Below are positions 6,345-57,646 of a stretch of DNA of 64,000 nt, one piece after another. Position numbers and translations under genes: made by a program. This stretch comes from Mobula birostris (lineage: Eukaryota), in contig NC_092384.1 of the NCBI RefSeq assembly GCF_030028105.1, positions 17,677,629 to 17,741,628 on the forward strand. The letters are read 5' to 3'. Position 1 is the first letter of the stretch. Every line of letters begins with the position of its first letter. Under the pieces are notes generated by a model. It saw nothing but the letters and a program-made list of their open reading frames with translations, did not search any database and was not told the DNA's origin.

Positions 6345-6434
6345 CTGCAACATAATAAAACACCAGATTGAATATTCAGCTATTATTTCAACGCATGTGT
6401 TCTCTGTCGAACAGTGGTATGCTGCCACTCCCAA

Positions 6435-24329: not shown

Positions 24330-25090
24330 TACAGAGTTGCTGGAAATCTAGAACAACACACAGGAAGGTGCAGAGGAGCTTAGTAGGTGAAGAAACATCT
24401 ATAGAAATGAATAAACAGTAGATGTTTCGGGCCAAGACCCTTCGTCAGCATTGGAAAGGAAGAGGGAAGATGCCAGAATACAAAGCTGGGGGAGTGAATG
24501 GAGGACTAACAAGAAGGTCATGGGTGAAGCCTGGTGAGTGGGGAGGAGGCGATGAAGTAAGAATCTGGGAAGTGATAGATGGAAAAGAAAAGGTACTGTA
24601 GAAGACAGAATCTGATAGGATAGGAAAGTAGACAATGGAAGAAAGGGAAGGAGGAAGGGCATCAAGGGGAGGATATAGGCAGGTGAGAAGAAGAAGTGGG
24701 AGGCCAGAATGTAGAACAGAAGAAGAGGGAAGGGAGGGAGAAAAATTAATGAAAGCAGAAATCAATGTTCATGCCATCAGGCTGGAGGCTACCGGAGTGA
24801 AAATGAGGCGTTGATCCTACACCCTAAGAGAGGCTTTATAGTGTCATAAAAAGAAGCTGAAGACCAACACGTCGCGATGAGAATGGAGAAAGGAAGTAAA
24901 ACGACTGGTCACCGGAATTTCTGCTTTTTTTTTTGGATGCAGTGGCGGTGCTTGCAAAAGTGGTCCTTTAATTTATTTTGGGTTGCACCAACGGAGTGGA
25001 GGCGGCATCGAAAGCACCGGAGAGAGTAGACAACCATAATAGATTCAAAGATAAAAATTTTCCCTCACCAGGACAGACTATTTGGGGCCC
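24330..25090 (-). mobile_element. Penelope-like fragment
   Basis: Reverse complement of the GIY-YIG region and terminal motif seen at 49.3-50.0 kb; orthologous position to 43790-44550. Confidence 0.6.
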
Positions 25091-28289: not shown

Positions 28290-30239
28290 GAGCACAATTC
28301 AGTGTTTACGAGATGTCAATCACTTATTTGCTGTTTTCCTCTTCTATTACAATCGAGTGACTGAATTATTTGGCCTGAAATAATAAGAAGCTGCTCGACG
28401 AATTCAAGGGGCCATACAATGTGTGTGAAGACAAGAGAATGGTCAACGTTCTGCGATCGCAACTCGGGATTAGAGGGTAGAGGTAAGATAGTCCATATAA
28501 TAACTGTAAGAAGGAGGTGCGCGACCGAAGCTGTCAGGTAATAGGTGGAACCAAACTGTGGGCTCGAGTAGTGGAGTGGTTGCAAGCGGAGCGAGAATAG
28601 TTTTTTTTTATAATTGGCGGATTCTACCTGAAATTACAGAAACTTTGTCTCGCCAATGGCGACGACTCTCTGGATGTTGTTTTTTTTTACCGTCTGAGGA
28701 ACGTTCAGGTAAAATCATTGGGATGTATTTAGTAGAAGTTGTTCCTTTTTCTTGAAATGATTGGGAACCAGAAGAGGAGATTGTGACTGATGATATCAAC
28801 CATTCTCACGTTGAATGGCCGGTCGCGCAGAAGAGAGAGACGGAATGGTGGAGTCTGCCTTATTCCCGATCCTATCCTTCAGTTCCCTACTTCTATTGTT
28901 TTTTCAGTGGCAATTGGCTCCAATGAATCAGAAAAAAATGTCGAAGTTTCTTTGATGTGTTTACTGTATATCTGCGTTCAAAGAATGTTTGTGTTGAAGT
29001 TTGCATGCTGGTGTGCTCATTGAACTGTGAAGCTGCAGAGCTGCGCAAGTCAGTTTGTCAGCAAAATTGTTATAGTCTGTGAAAATAATTCAAAATCTAA
29101 CATTCAGTGACTAATTGAATCAAACGATTGCAAAATAAATTAGTGATGTACTCATCAGTTATCAATTTTAGATTGCTACCGCTATACACAAGGTTTATGT
29201 CAATGTTCGTTCAAGATCTCCCTTTTTAATTTACATGGAATTTCAACGGCAAAAGCTTGTCTTGTCCCACAGAAGAATGAAAGTTTTTTTTTCCTTACTT
29301 AGAATGAATTTTAGCAAAATCTAATTGGGAGAGTTGAGAAATCGTTGTAGAGGTAGCTATGTTACTAAATGCTTGTCTAACTCACAATACAAGCTCATTT
29401 TCGTGTTATTTCTGTCTGATTTCCGCGGCCTGATTTATCTACTGAGCTCACAGGTGGTTGCTTCACTAGAGTAAAAGTTTAACTTGAACTGGACCTTATT
29501 GCGAAAGGACATTACGAAATTGTGATGATTATATCGCCAGCGATATAATTGTTCTGCAAGCTGACGTATATGAACTAGAGCAGATTTGTCATTCTCTTTA
29601 AACTGACATTGCTGTTCTTCTTTTGCAATTGAAAACATGTTTATTGATTGGTTCAGAAAGAAATTTCGCCCATTTGTCACAATGTCCACTTCTCTTATTC
29701 TTAACTTTCAGTATTATTTCAGCCGTCGTTACCTACTTTCCCCACAGAAGATAAAGGGAAACAATCAGTTGGGAATGCATTCGTTCACAGTCCACAGAAC
29801 CGAAGCCTATTTCGATTTTGAGCTTCTCGCTTCCTATGAAAGCTTCACATCTGCGTACACTGAATGTTAGCTGCCGTGCTTAAATGCCGATACTTCTTTG
29901 TTGGGAAACTGCAGAGCGGCATATGTCAACTTTTCATCACTGCCACGTCGAGTCTGTGGAAATAATTCAATATCCAGTCTTTGTCAATTGTCCAGCAAAA
30001 AAGTGTAGCGATCGATTTTAAGATACAATTGTAATGTATTTAAACATTTTCATTTTCGGAATACTGCCATTTTATTGAAAGAGAGAAAACAGAAATCGCT
30101 GTTTCTTTGTTCTTCACTGCCATTTTGCCATGTTTTACATTATTGTATAAGGTATTATTTTACACGGAACGAAAACTGCTTTCGGTGGACGGGGAGGAGG
30201 CCTCGCCCGGCACATGTAACGTGCAGGCCCAGCGGTATG

Positions 30240-30610
30240 TGGACACGTCCTGATGATCGTTAACCAGATCCCCAGCTATGGGTAAGTACCTACACTGCTT
30301 TGGGGGCAGCCTCGAGGGAGTCGAAAGCTACGGGAGTAAACCTGGGCAGCAAATCCGGAGTGCAGCCCCGAATGTGGCTGGAAGTTATTGAGCATCCGTC
30401 CGGAAGCTCCTGCAGCCAAACTGTTGCCAAACGTGCTGCTTCATAAGCTTTCCTTTGGAGGACACTGGTGAGGTCAAGAGGGAGATTCTGACGAATGGAA
30501 ATCTTAGGATCGCCATACCTTCCGTCCTGGCTTGTGATGATATTCATCATCAGCCATCAGGGCCATTGTCCTTCGAGACAAACAGATGACCACCACCAAC
30601 CACCACAAAG
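30240..30610 (+). mobile_element. Short RTE-related repeat in the predicted 3' UTR
   Basis: AAATCCGGAGTGCAGCCCC motif recalled from RTE 5' regions, plus a (CCA)-rich tail; family call is tentative. Confidence 0.35.
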
Positions 30611-30616
30611 TCAACA

Positions 30617-30850
30617 TTAGACCCTTCTGTTTTTATAGTTTAAAACTAGATAGTTTAAGACTATAGTTTTATATTTTAATATTCTTTCCAAAAACAATGC
30701 TTCTTTTGTATCTCCCCGCCCCCAATCCCTTGGCTTTACCTTGGCATAGACAACATGTTCGTCCTGGCGTCTAACCTGGTGATCTTTTTTGTTTTCTCTC
30801 ACGTTTAGTGTAGCATAGGCAAGGTTATGTTCAAATGGCGCTATTCCGGT
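30617..30850 (-). CDS. Terminal cytoplasmic exon with tandem ITIMs (LAYATL, VVYAKV)
   Basis: Acceptor CTCTTTGTAACAG, then TGIAPFEHNLAYATLNVRENKKDHQVRRQDEHVVYAKVKP...stop at 30617. AATAAA on the minus strand at 30071-30076 is a possible polyA signal. Confidence 0.85.
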   Translation of the reverse strand, partial: TGIAPFEHNLAYATLNVRENKKDHQVRRQDEHVVYAKVKPRDWGRGDTKEALFLERILKYKTIVLNYLVLNYKNRRV

Positions 30851-33800
30851 CTGTTACAAAGAGGTAGTTAACATTGTTAGTGGCAAGTCTAATGCAATTC
30901 CAATTCCATTAAGAAAAATGAGTATGAAAGAGTAAACTTAAATAAGTTAAATGCGACATAATAACATTCCAGCATCAGTAAATAATATTGCGAGGTTTGT
31001 TGTTTCAGAAACGGTACGAAATGTGTTTTCCCTAGTGCTGAACGTCGCTGTGATCTTTCAAGATTGAAATTAATTTCCAAGCACCATTTTCAGTCTATTC
31101 TACGAGTAAGATGAGTTTCTCATCTATCGTCATCTTTTTCCTTCCGCATTTATTTCCCTTTTCCTCCTTTCCCTAACAGTTTACACAGGGACAACTGTCA
31201 CCTTTTTATTCTTCAGGCCCTACAGAGTATTGAAGCAGCGTTGTGTGGGTCAGTGGCTGTCTTGGGTTCTCATACACTGACAGACATGTCCATTCTGTAA
31301 TCGTAACTTATCATAATATTCCTCTATCAAAATACCCCTCTCAGAAGCAAAAAGAAAAGCTGTATCACCTACCGGTTCTCCGCACGGACTTGCTTCCTCA
31401 GAGGTTCTTTGAATACCTAATGGATTCAAAAGTACAATACTTTAAATAATAGCTGTAGTGTTCGGGCACGTGGCCAAGTGGTTAAGGCGTTCGACTAGCG
31501 ATCTGAAGGTGGTCAGTTCGAGCCCCAGCCGAGGCAGCGTGTTGTGTCCTTGAGCAAGGCACTTAATCACACAGTGCTCTGCGACGACACTGGTGACAAG
31601 CTGTATGGGTCCTAATGGCCTTCCCTTGGACAACATCGGTGTCGTGGAGAGGGGAGACTTGCAGCATGGGCAACTGTCGGTCTTCCGTACAACCTTGCCC
31701 AGGCCTGCGCCCTGGAGAGTGCAGACTTTCCAGGTGCAGATCCATGGTCTCGCAAGACTAATGGATGCCTTTATTAGTGTTATAAAAGTTGAAGTTGTGC
31801 GTTGGATTGCAATCAAATTTCTTGCCTAAAGGTGCAACTCCTGACAGCTATTCAAAATGCTATGGCGCACATTGTGGCCATGAAATGTGTTGTGCATGAC
31901 CTTTCATGAATGTGGTGGAACTAGATTTTGATTGAAAGAGTAGAGTGGCGGTACTTGTGTAAAATCGCCGCACAAAGTCAGACTGAAAACCCCAGGCGTC
32001 TGAAAAACATAGGCACAAGGAATGATTGGATAACTTGAATGGGAATGTAAAAGTATTCTGTAATTTATAGTAAGTATTGTCGAATGTGACTCGGATAATG
32101 CCTTGGAAATCTTGATTCTCCCATTAACATTTCTGTTTTCAATCTGTAGAGGTAATAAATGGAAATGCTTGCCAAATCATTCGTGTTCTTACCACGTTTT
32201 GCCTTTACTCCGATTCTTATCAAAATTATAATCAGAACTACAATTGCCAGTCCGCTCAACGCACCTCCGAGAATCAGGGGCTTATTGATGTTGTCTAGAT
32301 CTGGTAATAAAAGAAGAAACTGTGAAACATACATAAATATATAGCGACCGTGAGACAAGGAAGTAGAACATTTTAATTGGTAATTCAGGCCTAAACAAAT
32401 AAAGATTGCAAGAGGCACAATATGACACGAGTTTTAAGGTAATGATAGGACTTATGGAGCGAACAGATCATCTTACATCATGGTTCTTTACAGCGCAACA
32501 CACAAAAAAAATGTTACAGGAACTCAGCAGGCAAGGCAGCATCTGTGGAGAAAAGTGGGCAACTTTTCGGTCGAGAACCTTTGGCAGGACTGGTGCTGCC
32601 TGGCCTGTTGAGATCCTCCAGCATTTAGTGTGGGTTGCTTGGAGTTACAGCATCTACAGATATTCTCTCGTTTGAGTTTTGGTTCTTCACAGTGAGTACT
32701 TTTTATTTGGGTTAAGATATTTTTTTCTTATAAAGATGCCTTTGCAGATAGTTTGGTCGCAAATTTGAACTTACATCGTTTCTATTTCTGAACTGTCACT
32801 CGAAAATTTTCTCAATAGATTCCATTGAAAAACAAGAGAAAATGACGTTTTACTTCCATAAAACATCACGAGATGCATTAATAGAATATTAAAAAGCACA
32901 ATCCGAAGGATATATGAGGAGAAGAGTCCAGGTAATTGGTGAAAATTGGAGAGGAAAACGACAAGGTTTAGAGTAAGTAATAAGACAAGTACACTGGCAG
33001 AGAGAATTCCAGCTTTATGTGCGGAGGTAGCCAAAGGCGTAGAATTGCGCACATAGTTAAAAAAATAACAGAATACGGAACAATAGACGAATTTATATAT
33101 CATTTATAAATATTTGAAACATAAATATGATTTGACTATTTATAAACGTGACCAACTTCCAAATTACTGCTTGATCCTGTCTCACTTTCCTGTATGGTTC
33201 AGATGCTTCGTTTCTCAACTGGCATGAAATATAACTATATCAGTCTCGGATATTTCCAATGAATACACATGCACAATATTAGAAAGGTAGAAATTACAAA
33301 GATTTACCAACTTCTCAATGAGGAAACCTCTCAGTACTGACTCTTATCAGGACAAGGAATCTACCTCCGGCTGAAGGAAATTGTCAACTCATATCCCCTA
33401 CCGGAATCTTATCTATGTATTAGATCGTACTCTCAACTCACAGAGCCTTTTGAATAACCTTACATAAAATTGTTTGTTTTTTTTTGTCACGGTGATATTA
33501 CCGTACAGAAGGTAACATTCACATCCTTCCTGATCTTCTTATTACATATTCTATTTCTCGCTTGAGATTTTATTTGGTGCAAACATACTATATGTTCTTT
33601 ACACAAAATCTATCAAAGTAAAACATATTTTTCAAATCCTTTCACCCAAAGAACACCGTTTTATATAATTACAAAAAACTTTACTATCCATTTTAATATT
33701 TTAAACTACTTTATTTTCATAAGCTATCTTCCTTCCCTTATTGCTCTCTTAGTGATTCTTTGTTGTTTTTTTTTTAAGTTTTCCCAATCTTCCAGATTCC

Positions 33801-36800
33801 CACTACTCGTGGTGACTTTGTACGTATGAGCTTTCAGTTTGATATCTTTTTTTATTTCCTTAGTTATCCGACGCTGGCTCTCCCCACCTGTACTCTCCTT
33901 GCTTTTGACTGGAATATACTGCTATTGAGCATCGTGAACAAACTCTTTGAAAGTATTCTACTGTTCTTCAAACGTCCCACCAAGTAGCCTATGCTCCCAG
34001 TCTACCCTAGCCAGCTCTTCCCTCATCGTTTTGCATTCTCCCTTGATCAGGCATAAGGCACTGCTTTTAGTTCGAAATATTGTGCCTTCCATTTGTAGAA
34101 GAAAAACAGTCTTTCTAAGAGGATCCCTCACTACAAGATTGGTCATTTTACTTCTCTCATTCCGCAGGGCCATATCCAAGATTACATTTCCCTTTGTAGG
34201 TTCAGTAGCATGCTGTTGAAGAAAGCTATCACGTATAGATTCTTTGAAGTCCTCCTCAAGACTGCCTCGACCAACTTGATTGACGTAATCTATGTGCAAG
34301 TTAAAGTCTACGATACCTGCTGTTCCATACTTAATGCTTCAGTTATTTCTCGGTTTAATGCCTGTGCCACTGTAATGTTATTATTCGGTGGCATAAAGAC
34401 AACTCCCACCATGGATTTTCCCCTTTACTATTCCTAATCTCTATTCAGATGGAATCAACATTCCGAACCTCAGATCTTATATCGTCTCTCACTATCGTCC
34501 TGACCTCATCCTTATTTAAGAGAACTTTCCCGCCTCCCTTACCTTCCTGCCTATCCTTCTGTATTACCTGATATCCTTGGATATTTATTTTTCAATCCTC
34601 TCTATTCTGAATCCATGTGCAAGGTAAAGTCCACGGTACCTACTATTCCATTCTTACATGTCTCAGATATTTCTGGGTTTATTTCCTGTGCCACTGTAAT
34701 GATATTATTCGGTGGCCTAGGGACAATTCCCACCAATGTTTATTTTCCCTTTACTATTCCTAATCTCTACCCAGGCGACCTCAACCTCAACATTCTGCTC
34801 CAGAGATATTTTATCGTCTGTCACGATCGCCCTGCTCTCATCTTTAATTTAGGGGGCTTCCCCACCTCCCTTACCTTCCTGCCTATCCTCCCGTATTACC
34901 TGATGTCCTTGGGTAGTTAATTCCCAGTTCTCTCCATTCTGCAACCACGGTTCTGTACAGGCCACTAAATAATACGCTGTTAAACTGATTTGTGCCACAA
35001 GTTCACTGACTTTGTTCCGGATACTACGAGCATTTATATAAAGTGCCCTTACACACATTGTGCCTTTAAAATCTAGTGATCTTTGTCTTTTATGCGCTTG
35101 ATTTTTCTGCATTCCTCCATCACTTTTCTCTTTTTTTTCATCTTTTGTTTTTACTTTATCATTATCCACACTTTGCACTTTTACTTTATCCATACTTCTC
35201 CAATCTGCTGAACAAACCCACATGCTACATATTTTAAAAACCCTATCCACAACCCCAGTTAAGCGATTCGCCAGAATCCAGGTCCCATCACTGTTTAGGT
35301 GGAGCCCATCCGAAAGGAACAGCTCCCTCAATACTCGTGCCAATTTCGCATGAATTCAACCCCATTTCTCCCACATCAATTCCTGAACTACGCATTTAAC
35401 TGTCTAATCTTCTTAACCCTGTGCCAATTTGCACGTAGCTCAGGCAGTAATTTAGAGATTGCCACTTTTTCTGATTCTGCTTTTTAAGTTAGTCCCTAGC
35501 TGCTCAAAATCCCTGATCAGGATTTCTTCCCTTGTTCTACCTTTGTCGTTGACACCCACATTTCCTTGCAGATGTAAGGTTGTAAATAATGTAAAAACGG
35601 TACACACGTTAACTTCACTCCGTTGAAAAAAAAAATGAGATTTCACATTTTATTTCTCATGTTTATACAGCTGTCCAGGCATATTCTCATTCAGGTTGGA
35701 GCTTTCTTTAAATGCTTCCGGTCTTACCTTGTTCGATAATATAGCTGAAACTGGCAGGAATTTTGAGCGTTTCGTGAGATACCAGACAGGTGTAAACCAC
35801 TTTACCCTGAGCAGGCTGCGCATCTTCCAAAGTACTGGAAGCCTCATACAATCCTTCTGAAGTCTCAGTTATTGACGGATCTATTTTAGGTAGAATTTCC
35901 ATACTATTTCTGCGCCAAAGGATGTCTAATTTCTTCGGATAAAATGCTGCAGTTTTGCACATGAGCTTCCGGGTTTTCGATGAAGTTTCTTCAACACGAA
36001 TGATTTTCAGCGGAGTTGGGGGAGCTACAACAGAATAAAACGCGACGTAGATTTTTTAGCTATTATCTGATCGTATGCGTTCTCCGTCTCATGCTACCAC
36101 TCTCTATTGTTATCATTGCTGTCGTTTGAAATCGCCTGAATTTGTCATTTATTAATTATTTCAGGGGGCGGGTAAACATGATAAAACAGATGTGTCGGTG
36201 ACAGATGGGGAACGCACGCCTGTTTGGAATAAACGTAGCAGGTTTAGTGGGTGTTAGGATTAAGCATATAACCATATAACAATTACAGCAAGGAAACAGG
36301 ACATCTCGGCCCTTCTAGTCCATGCCGCACTCTTACTCTCACCTAGTCCCACCGACCTGCGCTCAGCCCATAACCCTCCATTCCTTTCCTGTCCATATAT
36401 CTATCCAATTTAACTTTAAACGACAACGTCGAACCTGCCTCAACCACTTCTGCTGGAAATCTTTCCACACAGCTACCAGTCTCTGAGTAAAGAAGTTCCC
36501 CCTCATGTTACCCCTAAACTATTTCCCTTTAGCTCTGAACTCATGTCCTCTTGTTTGAATCTCCTCCACTCTCAATGGAAAAAGCCTATCCACGTCAACT
36601 CTATTAGTGATAATTTTTCAAAACCCGTTAGATTCTAGTTCCTGAGGATTGGAGGGTGGCTAATGTAACCCCACTTTTTAAAAAAGGAGGGAGAGAGAAA
36701 CCGGGGAATTATAGACCGGTTAGCCTAACGTCGGTGGTGGGGAAACTGCTGGAGTCAGTTATCAAAGATGTGATAACAGCACATTTGGAAAGTGGTGAAA

Positions 36801-39665
36801 TCATCGGACAAAGTCAGCATGGATTTGTGAAGGGAAAATCATGTCTGATGAATCTCATTGAATTTTTTGAGGATGTAACTAGTAGAGTGTATAGGGGAGA
36901 ACCAGTGGATGTGGTATACTTGGATTTTCAAAAGGCTTTTGACAAGGTCCCACACAGGAGATTAGTGTGCAAACTTAAAGCACATGGTATTGGGGGTAAG
37001 GTATTGATGTGGATGGAGAATTGGTTAGCAGACAGGAAGCAAAGAGTGGGAATTAACGGGACCTTTTCAAAATGGCAGGCGGTGACTAGTGGGGTACCGC
37101 AAGGCTCAGTGCTGGGACCCCAGTTGTTTACAATATATATTAATGACTTGGATGAGGGAATTAAATGCAGCATCTCCAAGTTTGCGGATGACACGAAGCT
37201 GGGTGGCAGTGTTAGCTGTGAGGAGGATACTAAGAGGATGCAGGGTGACTTGGATAGGTTGGGTGAGTGGGCAAATTCATGGCAGATGCAATTTAATGTG
37301 GATAAATGTGAAGTTATCCACTTTGGTAGCAAAAATAGGAAAACAGATTATTATCTGAATGGTGGCCGATTAGGAAAAGGGGAGGTGCAACGAGACCTGG
37401 GTGTCATTATACACCAGTCATTGAAAGTGGGCATGCAGGTACAGCAAGCGGTGAAAAAGGCGAATGGTATGCTGGCATTTATAGCAAGAGGATTCGAGTA
37501 CAGCAGCAGGGAGGTACTACTGCTGTTGTACAAGGCCTTGGTGAGACCACACCTGGAGTATTGTGTGCAGTTTTGGTCCCCTAATCTGAGGAAAGACATC
37601 CTTGCCATAGAGGGAGTACAAAGAAGGTTCACCAGATTGATTCCTGGGATGGCAGGACTTTCATATGAAGAAAGACTGGATGAACTGGGCTTGTACTCGT
37701 TGGAATTTAGAAGATTTATGGGGGATCTGATTGAAACGTATAAAATCCTAAAGGGATTGGACAGGCTAGATGCAGGAAGATTGTTCCCGATGTTGGGGAA
37801 GTCCAGAACAAGGGGTCACAGTTTGAGGATAAAGGGGAAGCCTTTTAGGACCGAGATTAGGAAAAACTTCTTCACTCAGAGAGTGGTGAATCTGTGGAAT
37901 TCTCTGCCACAGGAAGCAGTTGAGGCCAGTACATTGGCTATATTTAAGAGGGAGTTAGATATGGCCCTTGTGGCTACGGGGGTCAGGGGGTATGGAGGGA
38001 AGACTGGGGCGGGGTTCTGAGTTGGATGATCAGCCATGATCATAATAAATGGCGGTGCAGGCTCGAAGGGCCGAATGGCCTACTCCTGCACCTATTTTCT
38101 ATGTTTCTGTGTTTATCCCACTCATAATTTTAAGCACCTCTATCAAGTCCCCTCTCAACCTTCTACGCTCCAAAAATAAAGATTGACTTTAATTCTTATC
38201 CAATCTGGCCATTTTCGTTCCTGTCTCTGCACTTCTAGGTCAGTTTTGTATTAACGCAAAGTGAGTGTCAGTGAATCTGCAAAACTATGCTGGTTTCAAT
38301 GAGATCGGCGTTGTGGAGCAGCACACGAATCAAGCTGTGTTTCTCACTGTAGAGGTTTTACACATCTATCCCATAATTGTCATTAATGAAGTGGCTTTGT
38401 TTGCCTTTGGGCTTTAGATGGAATTGAAGATATTCCTCTGTGAATTTACTGAACTGTTGATTACGGTGTTTCGATGTTCCCCGTTCCAAAAGCTCTTCGA
38501 GAGTTTGGCAGTATGGACGATGTAAATTAATTACTTATAAATATTTGTGGCTATACGTTTAAACAAATGCAGGATCGAAATCGGTAAAATACGTCGAGAT
38601 GTGGTAGTATAAAAGCAGGCTGAGGAACGGGCGGATATCGTTTTACCTCAACAACGCTTCGCTTGGAATTAGATGGCTTCTGATTTGCCCTTCAACACAA
38701 TTTGTCTACTGCTCCCAATCTCTACTTAGCTAACCCGAATCAAATCCTTTGACTAAAAATGAGGTGGTTCTGTTCATTCGCTGTTTAATGTTTTTGATTG
38801 TTTGAAGTTGTTGGGGCTGGTTGAAGAATAGGTAAATGCACGGAGACGGTGGGGAGTATTGTGTAGGAATATAACAAATACATGGTTGGAAATATCAACG
38901 GTCCAAATAATAAGTGGAGCAAAAGCCAATCGCCAGGTTCACATCGAAATAATAAACAGAATAATCCGAAAAACTCCAAAATGATATTTTCTTTTTTTCA
39001 AAAAAAAAGGTGTAAAGCGAATTAGTGACACAAATTTTCAAACAGCAATACCATTTCAAAACATTTCCGCAATCTTGGGTTTTCCTAAAATGCAAAAAGA
39101 TGAAAATGTTCCACTTACTTAGCACAATAAGCTGAGATCCACTTCCATTTCCAAATATTTGTTGTTGACTTTTCACTTGACAGTAATACACGCCGACGTC
39201 TGAGTAGCTCACATTCAGGAGAGTAAATGTGCCCCTGCCTTTCTTTACTTTGAACTTATTTCTGCTGTTTGGTTCTATAAATGCCTTCTGATCCTCCTTC
39301 CACCACGAAACTTCAGCAGTATCTTGTAATATTGGAAATTTGCAGAACATGGAATCAGTTTCACCGATTGGGACTCTTAAGATTGGAGGGAATTGTTCTA
39401 CATTGGTCGAAGTTGCTTTTGCGGCTGACAAAGCATAAGTGAGAATGATGAAAAGAGTTTTATTCATTGGACGAAGAATCAACTGACAAAATAGGCAGAA
39501 CAATGGTATGCGAATTGAATATTTACTATGACTAAAATTGCTGGGGGTAATTAATGTATAATATTATAAAATATCTACTTCGTAGATTGGGAACAAATAT
39601 TTAAGCGTACCTGGCCAAAACGCGGCGAGAAGCGCCAAGCACAAAACGTCTGCATCCACCGACAT
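30617..39665 (-). CDS. VJ-C1-TM-ITIM immunoglobulin-superfamily receptor, predicted 347 aa; join(39665-39611, 39424-39119, 36024-35728, 32300-32193, 31416-31373, 30850-30617)
   Basis: All six exons have AG/GT boundaries with compatible phases (1,1,1,1,0) and total 1044 nt with no internal stop. Domain order is signal peptide, V, C1, TM, two ITIMs. Confidence 0.85.
31373..31416 (-). CDS. Short cytoplasmic linker exon (44 nt): GIQRTSEEASPCGEP
   Basis: Acceptor GAATCCATTAG and donor CCG|GTAGGT. Converts phase 1 to the phase 0 that the terminal exon requires. Confidence 0.7.
31460..31785 (+). mobile_element. tRNA-derived SINE, antisense within the TM-linker intron
   Basis: A box TGGCCAAGTGG, B box AGTTCGAGCC, central GTGTCCTTGAGCAAGGCACTTAA. 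Confidence 0.8.
32193..32300 (-). CDS. Transmembrane exon (108 nt): DLDNINKPLILGGALSGLAIVVLIIILIRIGVKAKRG
   Basis: About 22 hydrophobic residues followed by a basic stop-transfer segment. Acceptor TTTCTTCTTTTATTACCAG, donor G|GTAAGA. Confidence 0.9.
33900..35560 (-). mobile_element. CR1 5' fragments (ORF1 end / ORF2 start) with an internal duplication
   Basis: DGLHLN...WILANR, ALYINARSIRNK, QEGKGGG; 34350-34560 is repeated at 34680-34920. Confidence 0.8.
35728..36024 (-). CDS. Ig C1-set exon (297 nt)
   Basis: C1 signatures LMCKTAAFYPKKLDILW, GLYEASSTL, YTCLVSHETL. Acceptor TTCTGTTGTAG, donor G|GTAAGA. Confidence 0.92.
36270..36605 (-). mobile_element. CR1 3' end fragment
   Basis: Reverse complement of the 3' end at 16100-16420. 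Confidence 0.85.
36620..38110 (+). mobile_element. 5'-truncated CR1 with an uninterrupted 454-aa RT ORF (36656-38020)
   Basis: NYRPVSLTS, LDFQKAFDKV, GVPQGSVLGP, SKFADDTK, VRPHLEYC; 3' tail TTTCTATGTTTCT. Confidence 0.95.
39119..39424 (-). CDS. Ig V-type exon (306 nt) with J-like G strand
   Basis: Translates VEQFPPILRVPIGETDSMFC-KFP...VSWWK...FTLLNVSYSDVGVYYC-QVKSQQQIFGNGSGSQLIVL. Acceptor TTTGTCAG, donor A|GTAAGT. Confidence 0.93.
39611..39665 (-). CDS. Leader (signal peptide) exon: MSVDADVLCLALLAAFWP
   Basis: ATG at 39665, hydrophobic core, phase-1 donor CCAG|GTACGC. A strong acceptor TTTCTATCTTTCAG ending at 39686 implies an upstream non-coding exon. Confidence 0.75.
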
Positions 39666-42600
39666 TGCAAATGAGAGTGGTCCACCTGAAAGATAGAAAT
39701 TCATCGGATGTAATAATCAAGTGCTCGTAATATATGAAGTCATGTGGTCAAGGTTCCATGTTGCCTTGGGTAGAAGAAATGCTGCAGATACAGGAAATCG
39801 CGAGGAATACACACAACGCGCGAGCGGAGCTCAGCATTAATGATGAAAGAGAAATAGTCGATGTTTCGGGGTAAGGTCCTTCTTCAGTACTGGAAAGGAC
39901 GGGAGAAGAAGCCACAATAAGGAGATAGGGGAGGGAAAGGCGTATAAGCTGGCAGGTGATAAGTGGAGGGAGGGGAAGTAAAGAGATGGAACTTGATAGG
40001 TGGATTTATATTCCGTCTCGGTAGCCTCCAATCTGCTGATATGAACATTGGTTTCTCTAACGTTCAGTAATTTCTCCCGTACACATTTCACCGTTTTCCA
40101 TTTTCCATTCTGCGTTCTTTTTCCTCCTCACCCCGCTTTTCTGCTGCTCCTCCATTACTTTCGCCAATAGCCCAATGACCTCTCCTATCAGATTCTTTCT
40201 CATTCAGCTCTTTCCTACTTCCACATATAGCCTTCGGGGCATTCCGAATTCACACAAGGCGTTTCCTATGTTCTAGTCCTTCCCGGTTCACTGCGTCTAA
40301 ATGATATAAGCTGCAGCCCGTTATTGATTCTTATCGTTAAGTAATTCTAGCACAGCACAGGAAAATGTCTTTCGACCAATGATGCCTGTATCGGTCAAAA
40401 TGCAAATTGAATTCTATCTGCTCGCTCTTTTTTTGCATGTTCATGGGCATGTTTAAATGTCTTTTAACTGTTGTGATAATATCAGCACTCCCCTAGGCAC
40501 TGTCAAGTCGCCTAACACTCTTTGCGTAACATACCTGCTTCACAAACCTCACTTATTTTTTTCTCTCTTACTTCAAGGCGATGCCCTCTATTAACTGCCG
40601 CGAATGTTCATGAGTGATACTAGTGAAGAGAGTGGCTCGGCCAACAGGATTATAGAATCCCGGTTCTCGACGATATTTAGACACTGTTTCGGAGAAAGGC
40701 GACCTGCATCATCCATAGGAAACGAGTTCAAGCAATTCACAACCGAAATTTAAGCTATATTGTAGTACACCTGAGGGAAGTCATGAGAGCACAAATGTAG
40801 CATGATACAAACTTCAGTATAAATTGAGACCGAGAAATCGTGATGACTGAGCTGTAAATTATTATTTCCCATCACTGTGGCGAAAATCAGGGAAGCCAAG
40901 GGATTAAGGGGAATTAACATTATTTTTTAAAAGATTCACGGGAGAAAAATAGAGGCGTCGGGGGAACGGGGTGCTCACGGTTTAATTAACGCAATCCGTT
41001 TGATGAACATACAGCACCTGATCAAATGTATCTTTTGATATTTTGAGAAGCTGCAGGAGAAATTGTCAGGCCTATTGAAATGATATCAGCATCGTTTCTA
41101 ACAAGGATTAGTGTTACCGCAGCATTGGAGAGTGACAAATGTGCATTTATTTAAGAAGATCTGCAAGGACAAGCGGAGATTTGAAGGTGGCGAGACGAAC
41201 ATCGGTGCGTAGAAAGTGTATCGGAGGGAGAGAATCTATCACAATTTGGAAAGGCAAAAGTTGAAATAGTGACCGTAGTATGGATTTGTCATTTGGAATC
41301 TCATCTCACAAATTTGATTGAGTTGTTTTGAAGAGGTGAAGAAAATTGTTGAGGGCAGTAATTGGACTATACCTTCAAAGACATTTGCAAGGTCCTCTAT
41401 GGCAAGCTTGCATGGAAAGCCAGGTGACATGGGAGCCAGGGTGAGCAAGCCACCTGAGCACAGCAACACAAGATTGGTTTAGGAGAGGGACTCAGAAGGT
41501 GACAGTGGAAATTTGATATCAAGAATAACCGCCTGCAACTAGTCGTGTACTAAACTGGTAGGTTCCAGTTCTAGTATTGTTCATCATCTCCGAAATATTT
41601 AGATGAAAATATCTTAACTTAGTTGATATCTTTCGGGATGCAACGACATTGGTGGTGACAGTGAAAGATAACTACGACGATAAACTGCGAAAGCAGGCCA
41701 AGCAAGTGCAGATAGAATATAACTCGGACATTTGCACAAATTGTATTTTGGTCAATTAAACTAGGGCCGGTATTGCACAGTAGATTGTCCAGGGCGTTGA
41801 AGTAAAACAACGTGACTGAGGGGTAGACGTAGACTGATCATTGAAGCTGACAAAAAAGATGGATAGACTGGTGAGGAAGGTAATTGACACATTTATTCAA
41901 CAGTTGTCGCAATGAGTACAGCACCTGGGCCGTAATATTCAACAGTACAAGTCGTTGCTGAAGCATAATAAGAGTATTCTGTGCATTTCAGATCATCCGG
42001 CCATAGAAAGTGCGCGATGAAGCTTGGAATAGTGCAGAAAATATTCACAAATACACTTGCGGGGCAGCGTGTTTTAGTTGTAGGCAGAGTCAGGGGTTAT
42101 TCTTCTCTAGAGCACAGGAGGTTGAGTGGTGAGCTTATATAGGTATATAAAAGCATGAGGGGTGTAAGCAGTGGTATGGTTACAGTCTTTTACCCAGAAC
42201 AGATTAATCGAAAATGAGAATGCATCTGTTCAAGTTGAGAAACAATACATTTAAATAGATGTGAGGCAAGCTTTCCAAAGCGAAGGGACTTGGTAACTGG
42301 AATAGAGTACGGGATCAATTTGTAGAATCGGGTACGATTATAATGTGCTGGGAACATTTGGATTGGTACACAGATAGAAAAGGTTTATTGTGATAAGGTC
42401 CAAACGCAAGAAAATCCGTCTAGCTGGGATAGGTTTCTGGGTCTACCTGGACGAAATGGGTTGAAATCCTGGTGATCCAGGATTTCAAATGTGTTGAAAT
42501 TGTATGATCTCATGTATTCCTCTGGGCTAGCGGGGAGGGGGGGTGGTGTTCCTTCGAATGCCGGAGATAGAAGGGCGATGTGATAATAACATAGGGTTAA

Positions 42601-43789
42601 TGCGTGATTTATCTAATTGATCCTTGATTATGGACATGGACGTAATCACGAAAATGTGTTCCGTGCACGTATAACTTATTCCCGTAAACCAGCAGTGTAT
42701 TCTCCAATTGCGGCCTCATGTTAAGGTCAATAGAAGAAAGAAGGACAGGATACAATTGTCCCACTCATATGAAATTAATTTGTGTGAAAAATATACCTAC
42801 CTGACTTTTAGAGGTGAGAGCAATATTCTCTGACTGGTTTATAGAAGGCAATAATAAGAATCACAGTCGAGGGTAAAACAAAGTAGCGATATCTTAACAA
42901 CTTAAAATACGCCTTACAAATACTAGCCAGACTCCATTGAAATCGTCAAATGCCTGTTAATTGAAATGTATTCACTGCTATAAACGGTGTTTAATCTGTT
43001 TGAAAGTATTGTTAACCAAGAAAAACATTTATTTGGAGATTAAAGATTTTTAAATGTTTAACTTTTGTTTTCGTTTTGGAGGATTTGTGAAGTTTTGAAA
43101 TTTACCCCCCCCCCAAAAAAATCAGTTGTTTAAAACGTTTTTGATTTGACAGTCCCAGTTAACTCTGAAGACTACTGGATTATTTTTCTCAAGAGACGTG
43201 TCACACTATTCGGGAAACCCCACGAATTGTGCATTATCTGACTATTACCATGTGCATGGGTTTATCACATAAAATCTTATCCAGCCGTCTGGATCGTTGT
43301 CATTGTTAAAAACAAATACTTGCAGGTATCTTGCAAGGATTGCAAATTCCACTGCACTTGCACTTTAACGTGAAAGGTTTTCGGTAGACGTGGAAGAATA
43401 AAAGAGTGAGAAACAAAATCAATGCCTTCTTTGCCACCGTTCATCGGGCGATCAATCAGAAATCTTAGATCTGTTTTGTTCTCCACTGACGTTCTATGAT
43501 CAGCTGTTAATCTCCATGTTTCCTCCAATTTTGCGAACAGCGCTTTTCTTTGGAATATTTTGCGGTTGTTGTCCAGAAATTACTGCGCAATACAACCTAA
43601 TGTTAATCCCCATGGTCCTGCATTACTTCATTCTAGTCTTTGAAAACATGGTGAGAAAATTGGGTCCAAGTCCAAAGGGACTTCAGCATGTTGTGTGCTC
43701 CTTCTTCCCTTCTCTCAGCGGCAGCTATATAAGCAATTCCCCGTGAGACACACCACATTATCTTTAGCTCACAGTGTTCATTTGTGCAA

Positions 43790-44550
43790 GAGATTCAGCA
43801 GATACTGGAAATCTAGAGCAACACGCTGGCAGATCAGGCAGCACTTATGGAAATAAATGAACGGTCAACATTTCGGTCCAAGACCCTTCATTAGGACTGG
43901 AAAGCAGGAGGGAAGATGCCAGAATAAAAAGTTGGTGAAGAGGAGGACAAGTTAGATTGTGATAGCTGAAGCCACGTTGAGTGTGCTTTGGTGGGTGGAG
44001 GGAAGCGTGTACGGTTCGGCGGTGGGATGAAGTAAGAAGCTAGGAGGTAAGAGGTTGAAAATGCAAAGAGCTGAAAAACAAGGAATCTAATAGGAGAGGA
44101 GAGTAGACTACGGGAGAAAGGGAAGGAAGTGGGTCAGAAGTGGATGTTATAGGCAGCAGAGCTGAGAAGATAAGAGGACAGAGGTGGGAACAGAAGAGAG
44201 ACGTGGGAGGGAAAAATACCTGAAGGAGAAGTCGATGTTCATGTCGTCAGGTTGGAGGCTACCTAAACTGAATCCGCGGTTTTGCTCGCCCACCCTGAGA
44301 GTAGCCTCATGAAGGCGTAAGAAGAGGACAGGAATCGCCATGTCGGAACGTGAATGGATAGGAATAAAAACGATTGGCTACTAGCAAATTCTACATTTCG
44401 GGATGGACTGAAGGTGATCGAAAAGTTGGTCCCCTAGTTTGCGTTGAGTCTCAACAAAGTAGATGAGGCCGCATCGGTAGCTGTGGCTGCAGTAGACGAA
44501 CCTAACCGACACGCAAGTGATTTGTTGCCTCACTGTTCGTGGCCCTGAAT
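43790..44550 (-). mobile_element. Penelope-like fragment
   Basis: Contains LGSLQPDDMNIDFS on the minus strand. Confidence 0.65.
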
Positions 44551-47370: not shown

Positions 47371-49259
47371 CATATTTGCTTGAGAAAGTAGTCCACTCTT
47401 GTGACCTTGCTCTTCAGAGGAATGACAAATGGCTACTTGTGTTTTAAATGAGTAGATGAAGAAATGAAAAGGTAAGGTAAGAGTACAAAGTTCCTGTCAA
47501 CTACGAAGACGATATAATTGTGCGTCTTTACTTGAAAGTAAATATCAAAACAATATTTAACGGTGGAGAAATCGACGATATTTGAGATATGATGTGATCT
47601 AGGAAAAGGAAGAGAATAAATGATTATCAAAGGGAAATCTATCCCAGCCAGCATATCCAGCAGAACAGGTCTGAGCGGCCCACTCTTGTTTCTCTATTAT
47701 TTTCGCGTAATTCTCTGGATTGCCGAAACTCTTTCAGGAATGATGGTTGATTGCATTATCAGTCAGATGATTTATTTCACTGCCGATGTTCTCTGTACCA
47801 ACTCCCCACCATTCTTAGTCCCGTATCTTATCCACCAACCAGGCTGACCTGATGAGTAACAATAATGTATTATTCCACCAGGATGCTCACCCTGTTCTGT
47901 CACACATACATCTACCTGGACCGGAATTAATGAGTCATTTTACGACTATTGGCCAAATAAATGCTGGGCATAATTCAGATTTATTTTGTTCCATTGGGCA
48001 ATTGGGCAGTTACTAATCGCCGAGGAGCTCTGTCCAAAGCACTATATTCTTCGAGGGTACACATCTAGACACGTGATTCCAATATAAATCTACTTTCCAG
48101 CGTCCACGTTTTTCAGGCAAATGTTCTGATTAGGCTAAATCTAATTTCCTTTAATATGACCATGTGCGCATCTCCCCTGCTTTAATGTGGGCTGGGACAG
48201 GTACATAGGTTGCGATGCATTTCTCTTGCATTCTGGGTGCCCTGGGATTTCTGTTACTACCATGTGATAGTGCAGTTATATTTTTCAGATCATTTTGAAC
48301 AGTAAGCCGTGAATGTATATGAAACAGAAGAAAACTGAATATTTTATCATGCGACATTTTCTGATCAATATTCAGACACGGAGATATTATCGCGAGAACA
48401 TGTTGCGATGTTTTTCACATCTCCAAATCTGTATTTCTCTCGGTTGAACGTTGACATAAGTGGTGAAGGATAACTGTACAGTTGGCGTTTTTTACCCTGC
48501 AAACAAAGTTTCTGTCACTGGTGATGACGAATTTCTGATTTTTTTTTTCATCCTCTGAAGACTGTGAAGAGAATATCTTGGGGGGCGTTCGGCGGTACTT
48601 AAGGCAAAGTAGGTTTATTTCATAGAATGACTGGGGACTGTTCAATGATATAGCAGAGGAGAATATGTTTGAGCATATCAGACATTACCCTCTTGAACGA
48701 CATGGCTGTAGAGGGAGGCGGAATGGCTTATTTCCAATCCTATTCTTAAATTTCTTACTTTTATCTTTTTTACAGTGACAATCGCCTCTAATGAATCGAA
48801 GACGAAATTGATCCCTTATCTTCCTAACTTCTACATGTGATATCGATTAATAATCTTTGCCTGGATGCAAGAATTGAAAAGAAACAATGCCTCGGGCCTG
48901 CACTCATTAATCGTCAATAGCTTCGAACTGCAGTTGGATTCTCAGCTTCACAGTTTCTTTGATGGATTACATCTGCGTACAATGTTTGCTTATTTTGATG
49001 TTCGGATGCTGAGGTGTTCTTGGAATCGGAAAGCTGCACAGCAGCGTATGTCAGTTTGTCAGCTCCATTTCTCTAAGTCAGTGAAAATATTTCAGAATCA
49101 GCGTTTAATCGATAATCCATTGAGTTGAAAAAAAATCCAATCAAAAATTGTAAAAGAAATTAGTGATGCATTCATAAATCATCAATTTTAGATTTCTACC
49201 GTTTTACACCTGGAAGGGCATGTGTAGTACTTGTTCCACTTACAAGCATAAGTGCCGGG

Positions 49260-49960
49260 AAGGAGTATCCTTGTACATGCCCTTACACGTCCTCCCTCAC
49301 CACCATTCAGGGCCCCAGACAGTCCTTTCAGATGAGAAGACATTTCGCCTGTGAGTCGGTTGGGTTAATATACTGCGTCCGGTGCTCCCGATGCGGCCTT
49401 CTGTATATTGTCGACACCCGACGCAGGCTGGCAGACTGTTTCTCTGAACACCTACGCTCTGTCCGCCAGAGACAGCAGGATCGCCTAGTGGCCACACATT
49501 TATATCCATGTCCCATTCCCGTTCTGATATGTCTATCCACGGCCTTCTCTACTGTCACACTCAGGTTGGAGGAACAACACCTTATATTCCGTCTGGGTAG
49601 CCTCCAACCTGATGGCATGAACATTGACTTCTCTAACTTCCATTAATGCCCCACTTCCCCTTCATACCCCATCCTTTCTTTCTCATCCTATGGGCTCCCC
49701 TCCCCTTTTCCTTCTTTCTCCCCAGGCCTCCTCTCCTTTCTCCAGCCTGGCACCCCTTTTGCTAATCAACTTTCCAGCTCCTTGCTCCAACCCTCCCCCT
49801 CCTGTCTTCTACGATCATTTCGGATCTGCCCCTCCCCCTCCCACTTTCAAATCTCTTACTATCTCTTCTTTCAGTTAGTCCTGACGAAGAGTGTCTGCCC
49901 GAAACGCCGACTGTGCCTCTTCCTATAGATGCTGTCTGGCCTGCTGCGTTTACCAACAAT
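49260..49960 (+). mobile_element. Penelope-like element, GIY-YIG endonuclease end
   Basis: CESVGLIYCVRCSRCGLLYIVDTRRRLADCFSEHLRSV...IFRLGSLQPDGMNIDFSNF. Confidence 0.85.
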
Positions 49961-57538: not shown

Positions 57539-57646
57539 CGTGCAATCTTTTAAACTTGACTTTCACCAAAGCTATTATCAGAGCTAAAATTGCCGATCCG
57601 CCCACTGCACATGCCGGAATCAATTTAGTATTAACGCCCTTTGGAT
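57539..57646 (-). pseudogene. Paralogous TM exon (copy 3) with mutated acceptor
   Basis: DPKGVNTKLIPACAVGGSAILALIIALVKVKFKRLHG; same 108-nt length as the intact copy; donor GTAAG intact; acceptor position reads TG (57648-57647). Confidence 0.8.

What the first reader, a model, noticed from the sequence alone, without database searches (positions are those of the whole stretch)
30617..39665. Complete non-rearranging antigen-receptor-like inhibitory receptor (VJ-C1-TM-2xITIM) hidden among transposons
Seen: six exons splice in frame to a 347-aa type I membrane protein with one V domain, one C1-set domain, an uncharged TM and two ITIMs. V and the J-like strand share one exon, and I found no credible RSS. 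Established: V+J joined to C1 is the layout of an Ig light or TCR chain, C1-set domains are largely confined to jawed-vertebrate adaptive-immunity molecules plus a few relatives such as SIRPs and tapasin, and ITIMs recruit SHP-1/2. As I recall, germline VJ-C1 genes have been reported elsewhere (e.g. chicken PRARP and MHC-region surveys), but I cannot establish orthology here. Inference: an innate inhibitory receptor built on a TCR/IgL-like chain, a candidate relative of the pre-rearrangement antigen-receptor ancestor, and possibly an undescribed family.
Basis: partly seen in the sequence, partly recalled or inferred. Interest (0 to 1): 0.9.

Follow-up and report, generated by a model that had tools for sequence, protein, structure and literature searches.

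The report
Manta ray SIRP-like inhibitory receptor gene
This is a real, expressed manta-ray gene for a membrane receptor with an antibody-light-chain-like outside and an inhibitory tail; it is one copy of a large shark-and-ray gene family that public annotation already predicts and mostly labels SIRP-alpha-like, so it is useful but not a new kind of molecule.

Summary
The gene is real. On the minus strand, a leader, one V exon with a J-like end, a C1-set exon, an uncharged TM exon and tail exons splice in frame.

The 3' end is wrong. The real transcript most likely splices to a further exon at 29953-29867, giving 7 coding exons and 335 aa, not 6 and 347. This CDS is 100% identical to residues 61-395 of a RefSeq "uncharacterized protein" of Mobula birostris.

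The tail has tyrosines in LAYATL, VVYAKT and LTYAAL. A fourth motif lies behind a premature stop.

No RSS is present, so the gene does not rearrange.

Every homologue whose source I checked is chondrichthyan, in ten or more genomes. Automatic names vary: SIRP-alpha-like, NCR3LG1-like, Ig-lambda-like and others. The family tail consensus and protein-language-model neighbours point to SIRP-alpha. Fold and sequence searches cannot separate SIRP, IgL/TCR, B7 and butyrophilin.

This copy evolves at dN/dS about 1.1 against M. hypostoma, whose copy has a tail frameshift. Decayed paralogue exons lie in the window.

The scan noted many similar genes elsewhere in this genome. Verdict: a SIRP-like inhibitory receptor of moderate interest; special kinship to the antigen-receptor ancestor is not shown.

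The parts
39611..39665 (-). Leader exon, coding part (ATG at 39665-39663; MSVDADVLCLALLAAFWP + 1 base; phase-1 donor)
   Evidence: Identical to P0200 residues 61-78. Paralogues P0205, P0006 and P0017 start at the same Met.
39119..39424 (-). Single exon for the compact V/I-type domain plus the J-like G strand (..YYCQVKSQQQIFGNGSGSQLIVL). The family-invariant core is G-x-G-S-x-L-x-V, with N where antigen receptors have F/W.
   Evidence: Pfam I-set 33.2, Ig_2 32.6 and V-set 29.7 bits. Invariant G94, G96 and V101 in alignment A2. X5 holds 0.64 of the words of this stretch. It is the only V-profile hit in the window.
35728..36024 (-). C1-set domain exon (PPTPLKI..FYPKKLDILW..VYTCLVSHETL)
   Evidence: Pfam C1-set E 9e-9. 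PDB hits are Ig constant domains, MHC-related proteins and UrIg2. The RNA contig ends this exon at 35728 and joins it to 32300.
32193..32300 (-). Stalk plus uncharged transmembrane exon (DLDNINKPLILGGALSGLAIVVLIIILIRIGVKAKR)
   Evidence: Both borders were seen as joints in X5 record 26. Translation.
31373..31416 (-). Cytoplasmic exon 1 (GIQRTSEEASPCGEP)
   Evidence: Joints 32193>31416 and 31373>30850 in X5. Identical to P0200.
30740..30850 (-). Cytoplasmic exon 2 (TGIAPFEHNLAYATLNVRENKKDHQVRRQDEHVVYAK), carrying tyrosines 1 and 2. It ends at the donor AAG|GTAAAG.
   Evidence: The acceptor at 30850 was seen in RNA, and the contig runs to 30746. Donor use is inferred from P0200 identity and from the family junction ..VYxQ|TK..KLTYAxL.
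29867..29953 (-). Cytoplasmic exon 3 (TRRGSDEKLTYAALQFPNKEVSAFKHGS, then TAA at 29869-29867), carrying tyrosine 3. The ancestral fourth motif (SVYADV) lies just behind the stop.
   Evidence: translation. X5 record 25 starts at 29955, at the acceptor. Identical to the P0200 C-terminus. M. hypostoma has a Lys codon in place of the stop.
30617..30739 (-). Most likely intron.
   Evidence: No X5 contig lies on 30650-30745. The segment is absent from P0200. It is AT-rich and of low complexity.
39666..44341 (-). Upstream exons of the RefSeq model (44341-44263, 41453-41373, 39685-39666). They add 60 in-frame residues before the signal peptide and are probably 5'UTR.
   Evidence: Exact reconstruction. 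The first exon's peptide also matches repeats at 3723-3809, 24752-24793 and 49515-49634.
36656..38020 (+). LINE reverse-transcriptase ORF inside the V-C1 intron
   Evidence: Pfam RVT_1 E 1.6e-33. This roughly 1.5 kb block is missing from the orthologous intron of M. hypostoma.

Best explanation
The locus is an intact, transcribed gene of Mobula birostris (or a genome identical to it here). It encodes a 335-aa type I membrane protein. The parts in order are: signal peptide; one compact V/I-type Ig domain whose G strand carries a germline J-like motif; one C1-set domain; a short stalk without cysteine; an uncharged TM; and a tail with three tyrosine motifs (LAYATL, VVYAKT, LTYAAL).

It is one copy of a large, clustered, fast-turning-over multigene family. 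Every member whose source I checked is from a shark, ray or chimaera. In layout and tail pattern the family is closest to SIRP-alpha (SHPS-1).

Inferred mechanism: the V-like domain binds an unknown, probably cell-surface, ligand. Src-family kinases phosphorylate the ITIM tyrosines. The tandem SH2 domains of SHP-1/SHP-2 dock on a pair of them (Y282/Y305 are 23 residues apart, Y282/Y318 are 36 apart). The phosphatase then damps activating signals in the leukocyte that carries the receptor.

Shown: gene structure, splicing, transcription, domain types, absence of RSS, family membership. Inferred: ligand binding, phosphorylation, SHP recruitment, cell type.
For: - Splicing and transcription: the X5 contig joins four exons with GT..AG borders, and both Ig exons are held in X5.
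- Exact identity of the 7-exon CDS to RefSeq P0200 residues 61-395.
- Domains: C1-set and Ig/I-set/V-set hits. The AF2 ectodomain model has pLDDT 88.5 and two beta-sandwiches.
- Family: 128 representative clusters at E<=1e-10 for the C1 exon. The roughly 60 homologues whose source I saw are all chondrichthyan: Mobula, Hypanus, Hemitrygon, Narcine, Pristis, Amblyraja, Scyliorhinus, Chiloscyllium, Heterodontus, Heptranchias, Mustelus, Carcharodon, Callorhinchus.
- Clustering: members sit next to each other in Callorhinchus, and remnants of two more copies lie in this window.
- Tail consensus of 16 members: xxYAxLxL, about 20 aa, EERTVYxQTK, then KLTYAxLxL, about 20 aa, TEYAxI. The window gene fits it. 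From my memory of human SIRP-alpha (ITYADLNL..TEYASIQ..LTYADLDM..SEYASVQV), it is the same plan.
- Language-model features: the two nearest Atlas clusters are 'SHPS-1-like' (0.97) and 'Signal regulatory protein alpha' (0.96).
- The highest TM-scores in Swiss-Prot models are rat and mouse SIRP-alpha d1-d2 (0.75-0.76).
Against: - No ligand, phosphorylation or SHP binding was tested.
- The link to SIRP is weak by sequence. No non-chondrichthyan protein scored even at E<=10 among the word-sharing candidates. Fold searches do not single out SIRP.
- SIRP-alpha has two C1 domains; this protein has one.
- This copy shows no purifying selection against M. hypostoma: 15 non-synonymous and 4 synonymous differences, dN/dS 1.10, with introns 2-4% diverged.
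- The tail is damaged differently in the two species: a nonsense codon before tyrosine 4 here, and a 1-nt insertion in cyt2 in M. hypostoma. The Hypanus model lacks the tail.
- Expression is low (contig depth about 9) and was seen spliced in one of four RNA runs.
Confidence: 0.7

Rival explanations
1. This copy is a decaying or already non-functional member (an expressed pseudogene or a receptor losing its signalling tail) of a birth-and-death family. The open ectodomain frame is there only because the decay is recent.
For: - dN/dS is 1.10 against the M. hypostoma orthologue, matching the neutral expectation of 77% non-synonymous changes.
- There is a premature TAA before the fourth tyrosine motif here and a frameshift in cyt2 in M. 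hypostoma.
- The Hypanus and M. hypostoma gene models have no ITIM tail.
- Frameshifted or stop-riddled paralogue exons lie at 58.2-58.5 kb, 6.05-6.35 kb and 28.97-29.07 kb.
- The 5' exons are TE-derived.
Against: - All seven exons are open with intact splice sites.
- The transcript is correctly spliced.
- Two canonical ITIMs remain.
- Only 19 substitutions were counted, so omega is imprecise. Ratios near or above 1 are usual for ligand-binding immune receptors.
- The V domain alone gives 0.40.
Confidence: 0.2
2. It is a cartilaginous-fish orthologue of PRARP. PRARP is the non-rearranging VJ(-C1)-TM-ITIM genes described from chicken, with orthologues from bony fish to birds. That would make it a remnant of the antigen-receptor precursor rather than a SIRP relative.
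For: - The architecture VJ-C1-TM-ITIM is, as I recall the abstract of Fu et al. 2019 (J Immunol 202:1992), the PRARP layout.
- PMC10751288 names PRARP and NKp30 as VJ genes in the MHC.
- An earlier follow-up in this scan (s1-145046) reports a similar gene on another piece of this genome whose family runs 'from sharks to turtles'.
Against: - Among the roughly 60 homologues whose source I saw, none with this one-C1 layout came from a bony vertebrate.
- The bony-vertebrate entries among the hits I looked up are long multi-C1 proteins that score by summed domains, plus a 461-aa lizard V-C1-C1-C1 protein (P0041) and a 337-aa trout protein of three C1 repeats (P0032).
- No PRARP sequence could be obtained and the paper is not held, so there was no direct comparison.
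- MHC linkage was not tested.
Confidence: 0.07
3. It is a B7/butyrophilin-type ligand (NCR3LG1/B7-H6-like, as several automatic names say), that is, a V-C cell-surface ligand rather than a signalling receptor.
For: - Automatic names 'NCR3LG1-like' and 'PD-L1-like' are given to many members.
- The top VIA-align matches are a checkpoint regulator, PD-L2, B7-H6 and butyrophilins (Z 15-16.5).
- Pfam C2-set_3 (butyrophilin Ig-C) scores 25.4 bits.
Against: - C2-set_3 is under its cut-off of 27, while C1-set is well above its own (36 against 21).
- As far as I know, the J-like GxGSxLxV strand and the four-tyrosine ITIM tail are not B7 features.
- The Z-scores fall off smoothly through unrelated two-domain IgSF proteins such as Neph1, SYG-1 and nectins.
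Confidence: 0.03

Closest known systems
SIRP-alpha / SHPS-1 (PTPNS1) and the SIRP family
   Same: - A non-rearranging N-terminal Ig domain with a J-like G strand in one exon.
- C1-set constant domain(s) and an uncharged TM.
- A tail with paired xxYAxL and xEYAxI/V motifs about 20-25 residues apart (family consensus; SIRP-alpha motifs from memory).
- Nearest language-model clusters and best TM-scores.
- The commonest automatic name in the family.
   Different: - One C1 domain instead of two. A few members have two (P0009).
- The N-domain is shorter and scores as I-set.
- The second tyrosine motif is RTVYxQT rather than TEYASI.
- No detectable sequence match to tetrapod SIRPs in the word-limited searches.
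- Orthology, synteny with human 20p13 and CD47 binding are untested.
[quoted passage not shown] 2019)
   Same: A germline VJ exon, a C1 domain in non-avian species, a TM and an ITIM-bearing tail (from memory of the abstract). PRARP is cited as an MHC-region VJ gene in PMC10751288.
   Different: PRARP is reported from bony fish to birds. For this family, no homologue of the same layout whose source I saw came from outside Chondrichthyes. No sequence comparison was possible.
UrIg and UrIg2 (non-rearranging elasmobranch VJ-C1 genes; PMC12227049)
   Same: Elasmobranch, with a single-exon VJ, a split leader, C1-set domains and no RSS. The UrIg2 structure 9dmx is among the top PDB sequence hits of the C1 exon.
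   Different: UrIg has three C domains and is secreted. UrIg2 has nine to eleven C domains. The word ITIM does not occur in the UrIg2 paper. Here there is one C1 and an ITIM tail. The 9dmx score comes from several domains added together and is no better than that of Ig heavy chains.
Ig light chains and TCR chains
   Same: V + J-like strand + one C1-set domain. They give the best Foldseek E-values (1e-15 to 1e-13, 21-24% identity).
   Different: There is no V/J split, no RSS and no stalk cysteine for an interchain bond. N replaces the F/W of FGxG. The V is compact, without a C'' strand in the model. The tail carries ITIMs.

Membership tests
SIRP family | N-terminal V-type Ig domain with a germline J-like G strand, non-rearranging | tested here: met
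   A single exon 39424-39119 ends ..NGSGSQLIVL. GxG and V are invariant in the family. There is no RSS. Caveat: the domain scores I-set above V-set.
SIRP family | Membrane-proximal C1-set domains (two in SIRP-alpha) | tested here: inconclusive
   The C1-set type is met (36 bits), but there is only one such domain. Some family members have two (P0009).
SIRP family | Cytoplasmic tail with four tyrosines forming two ITIM pairs that bind SHP-1/SHP-2 | tested here: inconclusive
   The family consensus has four tyrosine motifs in the SIRP-like order. This gene keeps three, two of them canonical. SHP binding is not testable here.
SIRP family | Orthology: conserved synteny with the SIRP cluster (human 20p13) and a tree grouping with SIRPs | not tested
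   Only family members were seen within 10 kb in Callorhinchus. No curated SIRP sequences were obtainable. Language-model neighbours are SIRP-alpha clusters, which is a lead, not a test.
SIRP family | Binding of CD47 (SIRP-alpha, SIRP-gamma) | not testable with these tools
   Needs a binding assay.
PRARP | VJ single exon + (C1) + TM + ITIM | tested here: met
   Gene model. The definition of PRARP rests on my memory of Fu et al. 2019.
PRARP | Orthologues across bony fish, amphibians, reptiles and birds; MHC-region location | tested here: inconclusive
   No homologue of the same one-C1 layout whose source I saw came from a bony vertebrate. The searches were word-limited or used C1 only, and only about a third of the 150 listed C1 hits had their source looked up. 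Map position is untested.
UrIg/UrIg2 | VJ followed by three or more C1-type domains; secreted, or membrane-bound with many C domains | tested here: not met
   One C1 domain and an ITIM tail, against the descriptions in PMC12227049.
Rearranging antigen receptors (IgL, TCR) | Separate V and J segments flanked by RSS heptamer-spacer-nonamer | tested here: not met
   V and J are contiguous in one exon. There are 0 heptamer-nonamer matches, and no heptamer near the exon.
B7/butyrophilin (NCR3LG1-like) | IgV + B7-type IgC (Pfam C2-set_3 / C2-set_2), no J motif, no ITIM pairs | tested here: not met
   C2-set_3 scores 25.4 bits, below its cut-off of 27. C1-set scores 36 bits, above its cut-off of 21. 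The J-like strand and the tyrosine tail are present.

The most novel reading that the evidence does not exclude
The chondrichthyan V(J)-C1-TM-ITIM genes form a distinct, ancient family, present in chimaeras, sharks and rays. On this reading it is neither SIRP nor PRARN-type orthologous to anything in bony vertebrates, but a separate surviving lineage of the pre-RAG VJ-C1 stock. Together with UrIg/UrIg2 and NKp30, its dozens of germline-joined V exons could then be used to polarise the characters of the exon that the RAG transposon split.
Probability: 0.15. Interest if true: 0.7.

Novelty: new member of a known kind. Interest (0 to 1): 0.38.

Why it matters
Non-rearranging genes that join a J-bearing V exon to a C1 domain are the comparison set for the question of which gene the RAG transposon invaded. 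The published candidates are UrIg, UrIg2, NKp30 and PRARP.

This locus shows that mantas, and by homology the other cartilaginous fish sampled, carry many such genes wired to an inhibitory tail. Public annotation hides them under a dozen conflicting automatic names. I found no paper on them in the library searched.

A curated description with phylogeny and map position would tell two things. First, whether SIRP-type inhibitory receptors go back to the base of jawed vertebrates. Second, whether the family is linked to the MHC or its paralogons.

For this single copy the matter is ordinary: one fast-evolving, partly eroded member of a multigene family.

Tried and rejected
- My first reconstruction of the tail (cyt1 31392-31336, cyt2 from 30840) was wrong. 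The RNA contig showed 31416-31373 and 30850.
- Profile searches of the PDB with family V and C1 alignments were swamped by multi-domain proteins (titin, contactins, Ig heavy chains) whose scores add up, so they could not rank families.
- Foldseek (Swiss-Prot models, PDB) and VIA-align gave flat rankings over all V-C two-domain IgSF proteins.
- The alignment-based protein search was saturated at 8000 candidates and returned only 27 family members. A single-sequence search at E<=10 found nothing outside Chondrichthyes.
- PRARP (Fu et al. 2019) and the first UrIg paper are not held. 'PRARP' as a search word gives urology papers. Searches for SIRP with shark, Callorhinchus or cartilaginous fish found nothing relevant.
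- Synteny by 10-kb flanks in Callorhinchus showed only more family members. Earlier scan notes put the MHC-type findings they listed on other pieces of the genome, which does not settle linkage.
- ARAGORN and Rfam found nothing in the highly 'expressed' repeat at 31.45-31.85 kb.
- A secreted UrIg-like reading was rejected (one C1, TM present), and so was a rearranging-segment reading (no RSS).


Full report
**Observation**

The region was read on both strands. On the minus strand there are, in order:
- an ATG-led hydrophobic leader (39665-39611);
- an Ig-domain exon (39424-39119);
- a second Ig-domain exon (36024-35728);
- a stalk/TM exon (32300-32193).

All four have AG/GT borders and phase-1 junctions. 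The two cytoplasmic exons I first guessed were wrong.

Logan contigs of four RNA runs of the same organism were laid on 29850-35849. Run X5 contains one 364-nt contig that joins 35728 to 32300, 32193 to 31416 and 31373 to 30850, each time skipping a GT..AG intron on the minus strand. With these exons and read-through to the stop at 30619-30617 the product is exactly 347 aa. X5 also holds 0.85 of the sampled words of the C1 stretch and 0.64 of those of the V stretch. For C1 that share equals the exon's share of the stretch.

**The 3' end**

The X5 contig stops at 30746, and no X5 contig lies on 30650-30745. Family proteins aligned to the window revealed a further tail exon near 29.9 kb. It has a good acceptor and reads TRRGSDEKLTYAALQFPNKEVSAFKHGS, then a stop, then a decayed SVYADV. 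An X5 contig begins at 29955, at that acceptor.

A RefSeq model, P0200 ('uncharacterized protein [Mobula birostris]', 395 aa), turned up in the profile search. Its residues 61-395 are reproduced letter for letter by the seven exons:
- L
- VJ
- C1
- TM
- 31416-31373
- 30850-30740
- 29953-29867

This gives 1008 nt and 335 aa. Its first 60 residues are reproduced by three upstream pieces at 44341-44263, 41453-41373 and 39685-39666. So the window is M. birostris or identical to it here.

The donor AAG|GTAAAG after 30740 is used in the annotated transcript. The junction ..VYxQ|TK..KLTYAxL is conserved in the family alignment.

The 60-residue N-terminal extension would bury the signal peptide. Its first exon matches dispersed repeats. 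Paralogues start at the MSVD/MSLD methionine. I therefore take it for 5'UTR.

**Domains**

- Pfam gives C1-set for the second domain (E 9e-9; 36 bits against a cut-off of 21). The butyrophilin C2-set_3 model stays under its cut-off. Hallmarks FYPxxLxIxW and YTCLVSHxxL are present.
- The first domain scores I-set 33.2, Ig_2 32.6, Ig_3 31.7 and V-set 29.7 bits, the last on its C-terminal half only.
- It has only 54 residues between its cysteines. In the AlphaFold model (pLDDT 88.5, pTM 0.77) it shows no C'' strand.
- Its G strand is J-like. In 16 family members G94, G96 and V101 are invariant or nearly so, giving N-G-x-G-S/T-x-L-x-V. The FG just before it in this gene is not the conserved part.
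- NGS here is an N-glycosylation sequon inside the motif.
- There is no heptamer-spacer-nonamer anywhere in the window. The nine CACAGTG heptamers (7 expected by chance) are all at least 1.4 kb from the V exon.
- The stalk has no cysteine and the TM no charge.

**Relatives**

An exhaustive HMMER search with the C1 exon found 432 representatives at E<=0.001 and 128 at E<=1e-10. The single-C1 hits have the same layout, with C1 at about residues 122-219. All whose source was looked up are chondrichthyan. Three further searches found only chondrichthyan proteins, even at E<=10.

At least eleven different M. birostris proteins on the same 86.2-Mb record belong to the family. In Callorhinchus the genes lie side by side.

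The automatic names contradict each other: SHPS-1/SIRP-alpha-like, SIRP-beta-like, NCR3LG1-like, Ig lambda-like, TCR beta-like, PD-L1-like, tapasin-related-like and MHC class II-like. That is what one expects of a family equally far from all of them.

The entries from bony vertebrates among the hits I looked up are of two kinds. Most are long multi-C1 proteins that score by summed domains. The others are a 461-aa lizard V-C1-C1-C1 protein and a 337-aa trout protein of three C1 repeats.

**What it resembles**

- The family tail consensus is xxYAxLxL, about 20 residues, EERTVYxQTK, then KLTYAxLxL, about 20 residues, TEYAxI. The window gene has LAYATL, VVYAKT and LTYAAL, and the fourth motif lies behind its stop. 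As I remember human SIRP-alpha (ITYADLNL, TEYASIQ, LTYADLDM, SEYASVQV), this is the same plan.
- The ESM Atlas feature search puts 'SHPS-1-like' (0.97) and 'Signal regulatory protein alpha' (0.96) first.
- Foldseek against Swiss-Prot models gives the best TM-scores to rodent SIRP-alpha d1-d2 (0.75-0.76). Its E-values are flat from Ig kappa to PD-L1.
- PDB Foldseek lists only Fab light chains.
- VIA-align lists B7, PD-L2, Neph and butyrophilin first.

So 'works like SIRP-alpha' is the best-supported reading. Membership of the SIRP family is unproven, and special closeness to IgL/TCR is not shown.

UrIg and UrIg2, the published elasmobranch VJ-C1 genes, have three and nine to eleven C domains, so this is not one of them. 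PRARP has, as I recall, the same VJ-C1-TM-ITIM layout, but I could not obtain it.

**State of this copy**

The M. hypostoma orthologue (L001) keeps all seven exons at 96.5-98.4% identity with their flanks.
- Over L to cyt1 there are 15 non-synonymous and 4 synonymous differences. dN/dS is 1.10 overall, 0.40 for V and 1.02 for C1. Introns differ by 2-4%.
- M. hypostoma has an extra A in the A-run of cyt2, which shifts the frame after the first ITIM. It has a Lys codon where M. birostris has the TAA.
- Its RefSeq model and the Hypanus model lack the tail.

The window also holds the following remnants:
- a C1 exon with a frameshift (58214-58511), with TM (57516-57704) and tail (48968-49090) exons of a second, V-less copy;
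- a stop-riddled C1 remnant (6050-6351);
- a decayed duplicate of the last tail exon (28967-29071).

This is birth-and-death evolution. The copy studied is intact and spliced, but under little or no purifying selection.

**Earlier notes of the scan**

The same V exon was noted as 'unusually compact' (s1-145959), and I agree. At least eleven notes describe VJ-C1-ITIM genes elsewhere in this genome. Some lie on the same piece, 0.25 Mb and about 14 Mb away. One followed-up case on another piece is said to belong to a family 'from sharks to turtles' (s1-145046). For the present family I found no member of the same layout outside Chondrichthyes.

**Verdict**

A real, expressed, non-rearranging V(J)-C1-TM-ITIM receptor gene. 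It is best read as a SIRP-alpha-like inhibitory receptor of a chondrichthyan multigene family, and its exact protein is already in RefSeq. Its evolutionary interpretation goes beyond the evidence.

Noticed in passing
window 58214-58511, 57516-57704, 48968-49090 (minus strand): Remnant of a second family gene, closest to M. hypostoma P0017 (81-95% identity). It has a C1 exon with a frameshift near 58254-58276, a TM exon and an open tail exon (..KLTYAAVQL..TLYADV..). No V exon was found in the window for it.
   Followed up: partly
window 6050-6351 (minus) and 28967-29071 (minus): A stop-riddled C1-set pseudo-exon, and a decayed duplicate of the last tail exon (LTCAAL, SLNADI) about 0.8 kb downstream of the real one.
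   Followed up: partly
window 36600-38110 (LINE RT ORF 36656-38020, + strand): The reverse-transcriptase element in the V-C1 intron is absent from the orthologous intron of M. hypostoma. It is therefore an insertion in the M. birostris lineage or a deletion in the other. Similar copies lie elsewhere in L001.
   Followed up: partly
window 31450-31850: A repeat in the TM-cyt1 intron has enormous summed contig depth in all four RNA runs (7,000 to 48,000), with many contigs at 95-99% identity. This looks like a very abundant SINE-like element. ARAGORN and Rfam find nothing there.
   Followed up: partly
L001 21639-21810 (M. hypostoma orthologue, cyt2 exon): A one-base insertion in an A-run shifts the frame after the first ITIM. 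The RefSeq model there (P0001) skips the tail and takes a 3' exon some 50 kb away, so its gene range is 65 kb. This could be a real lesion or a homopolymer error.
   Followed up: partly
window 44341-44263, 41453-41373, 39685-39666 (minus): The RefSeq model P0200 starts 60 codons upstream of the signal peptide, in exons of which the first matches dispersed repeats in the window. This is probably a TE-derived 5'UTR or alternative promoter rather than coding sequence.
   Followed up: partly
window 39119-39160 (J-like motif): The conserved N of the family motif N-G-S/T-G makes an N-glycosylation sequon inside the G-strand bulge that mediates V-V pairing in antigen receptors. A glycan there would argue against a light-chain-like dimer.
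   Followed up: no
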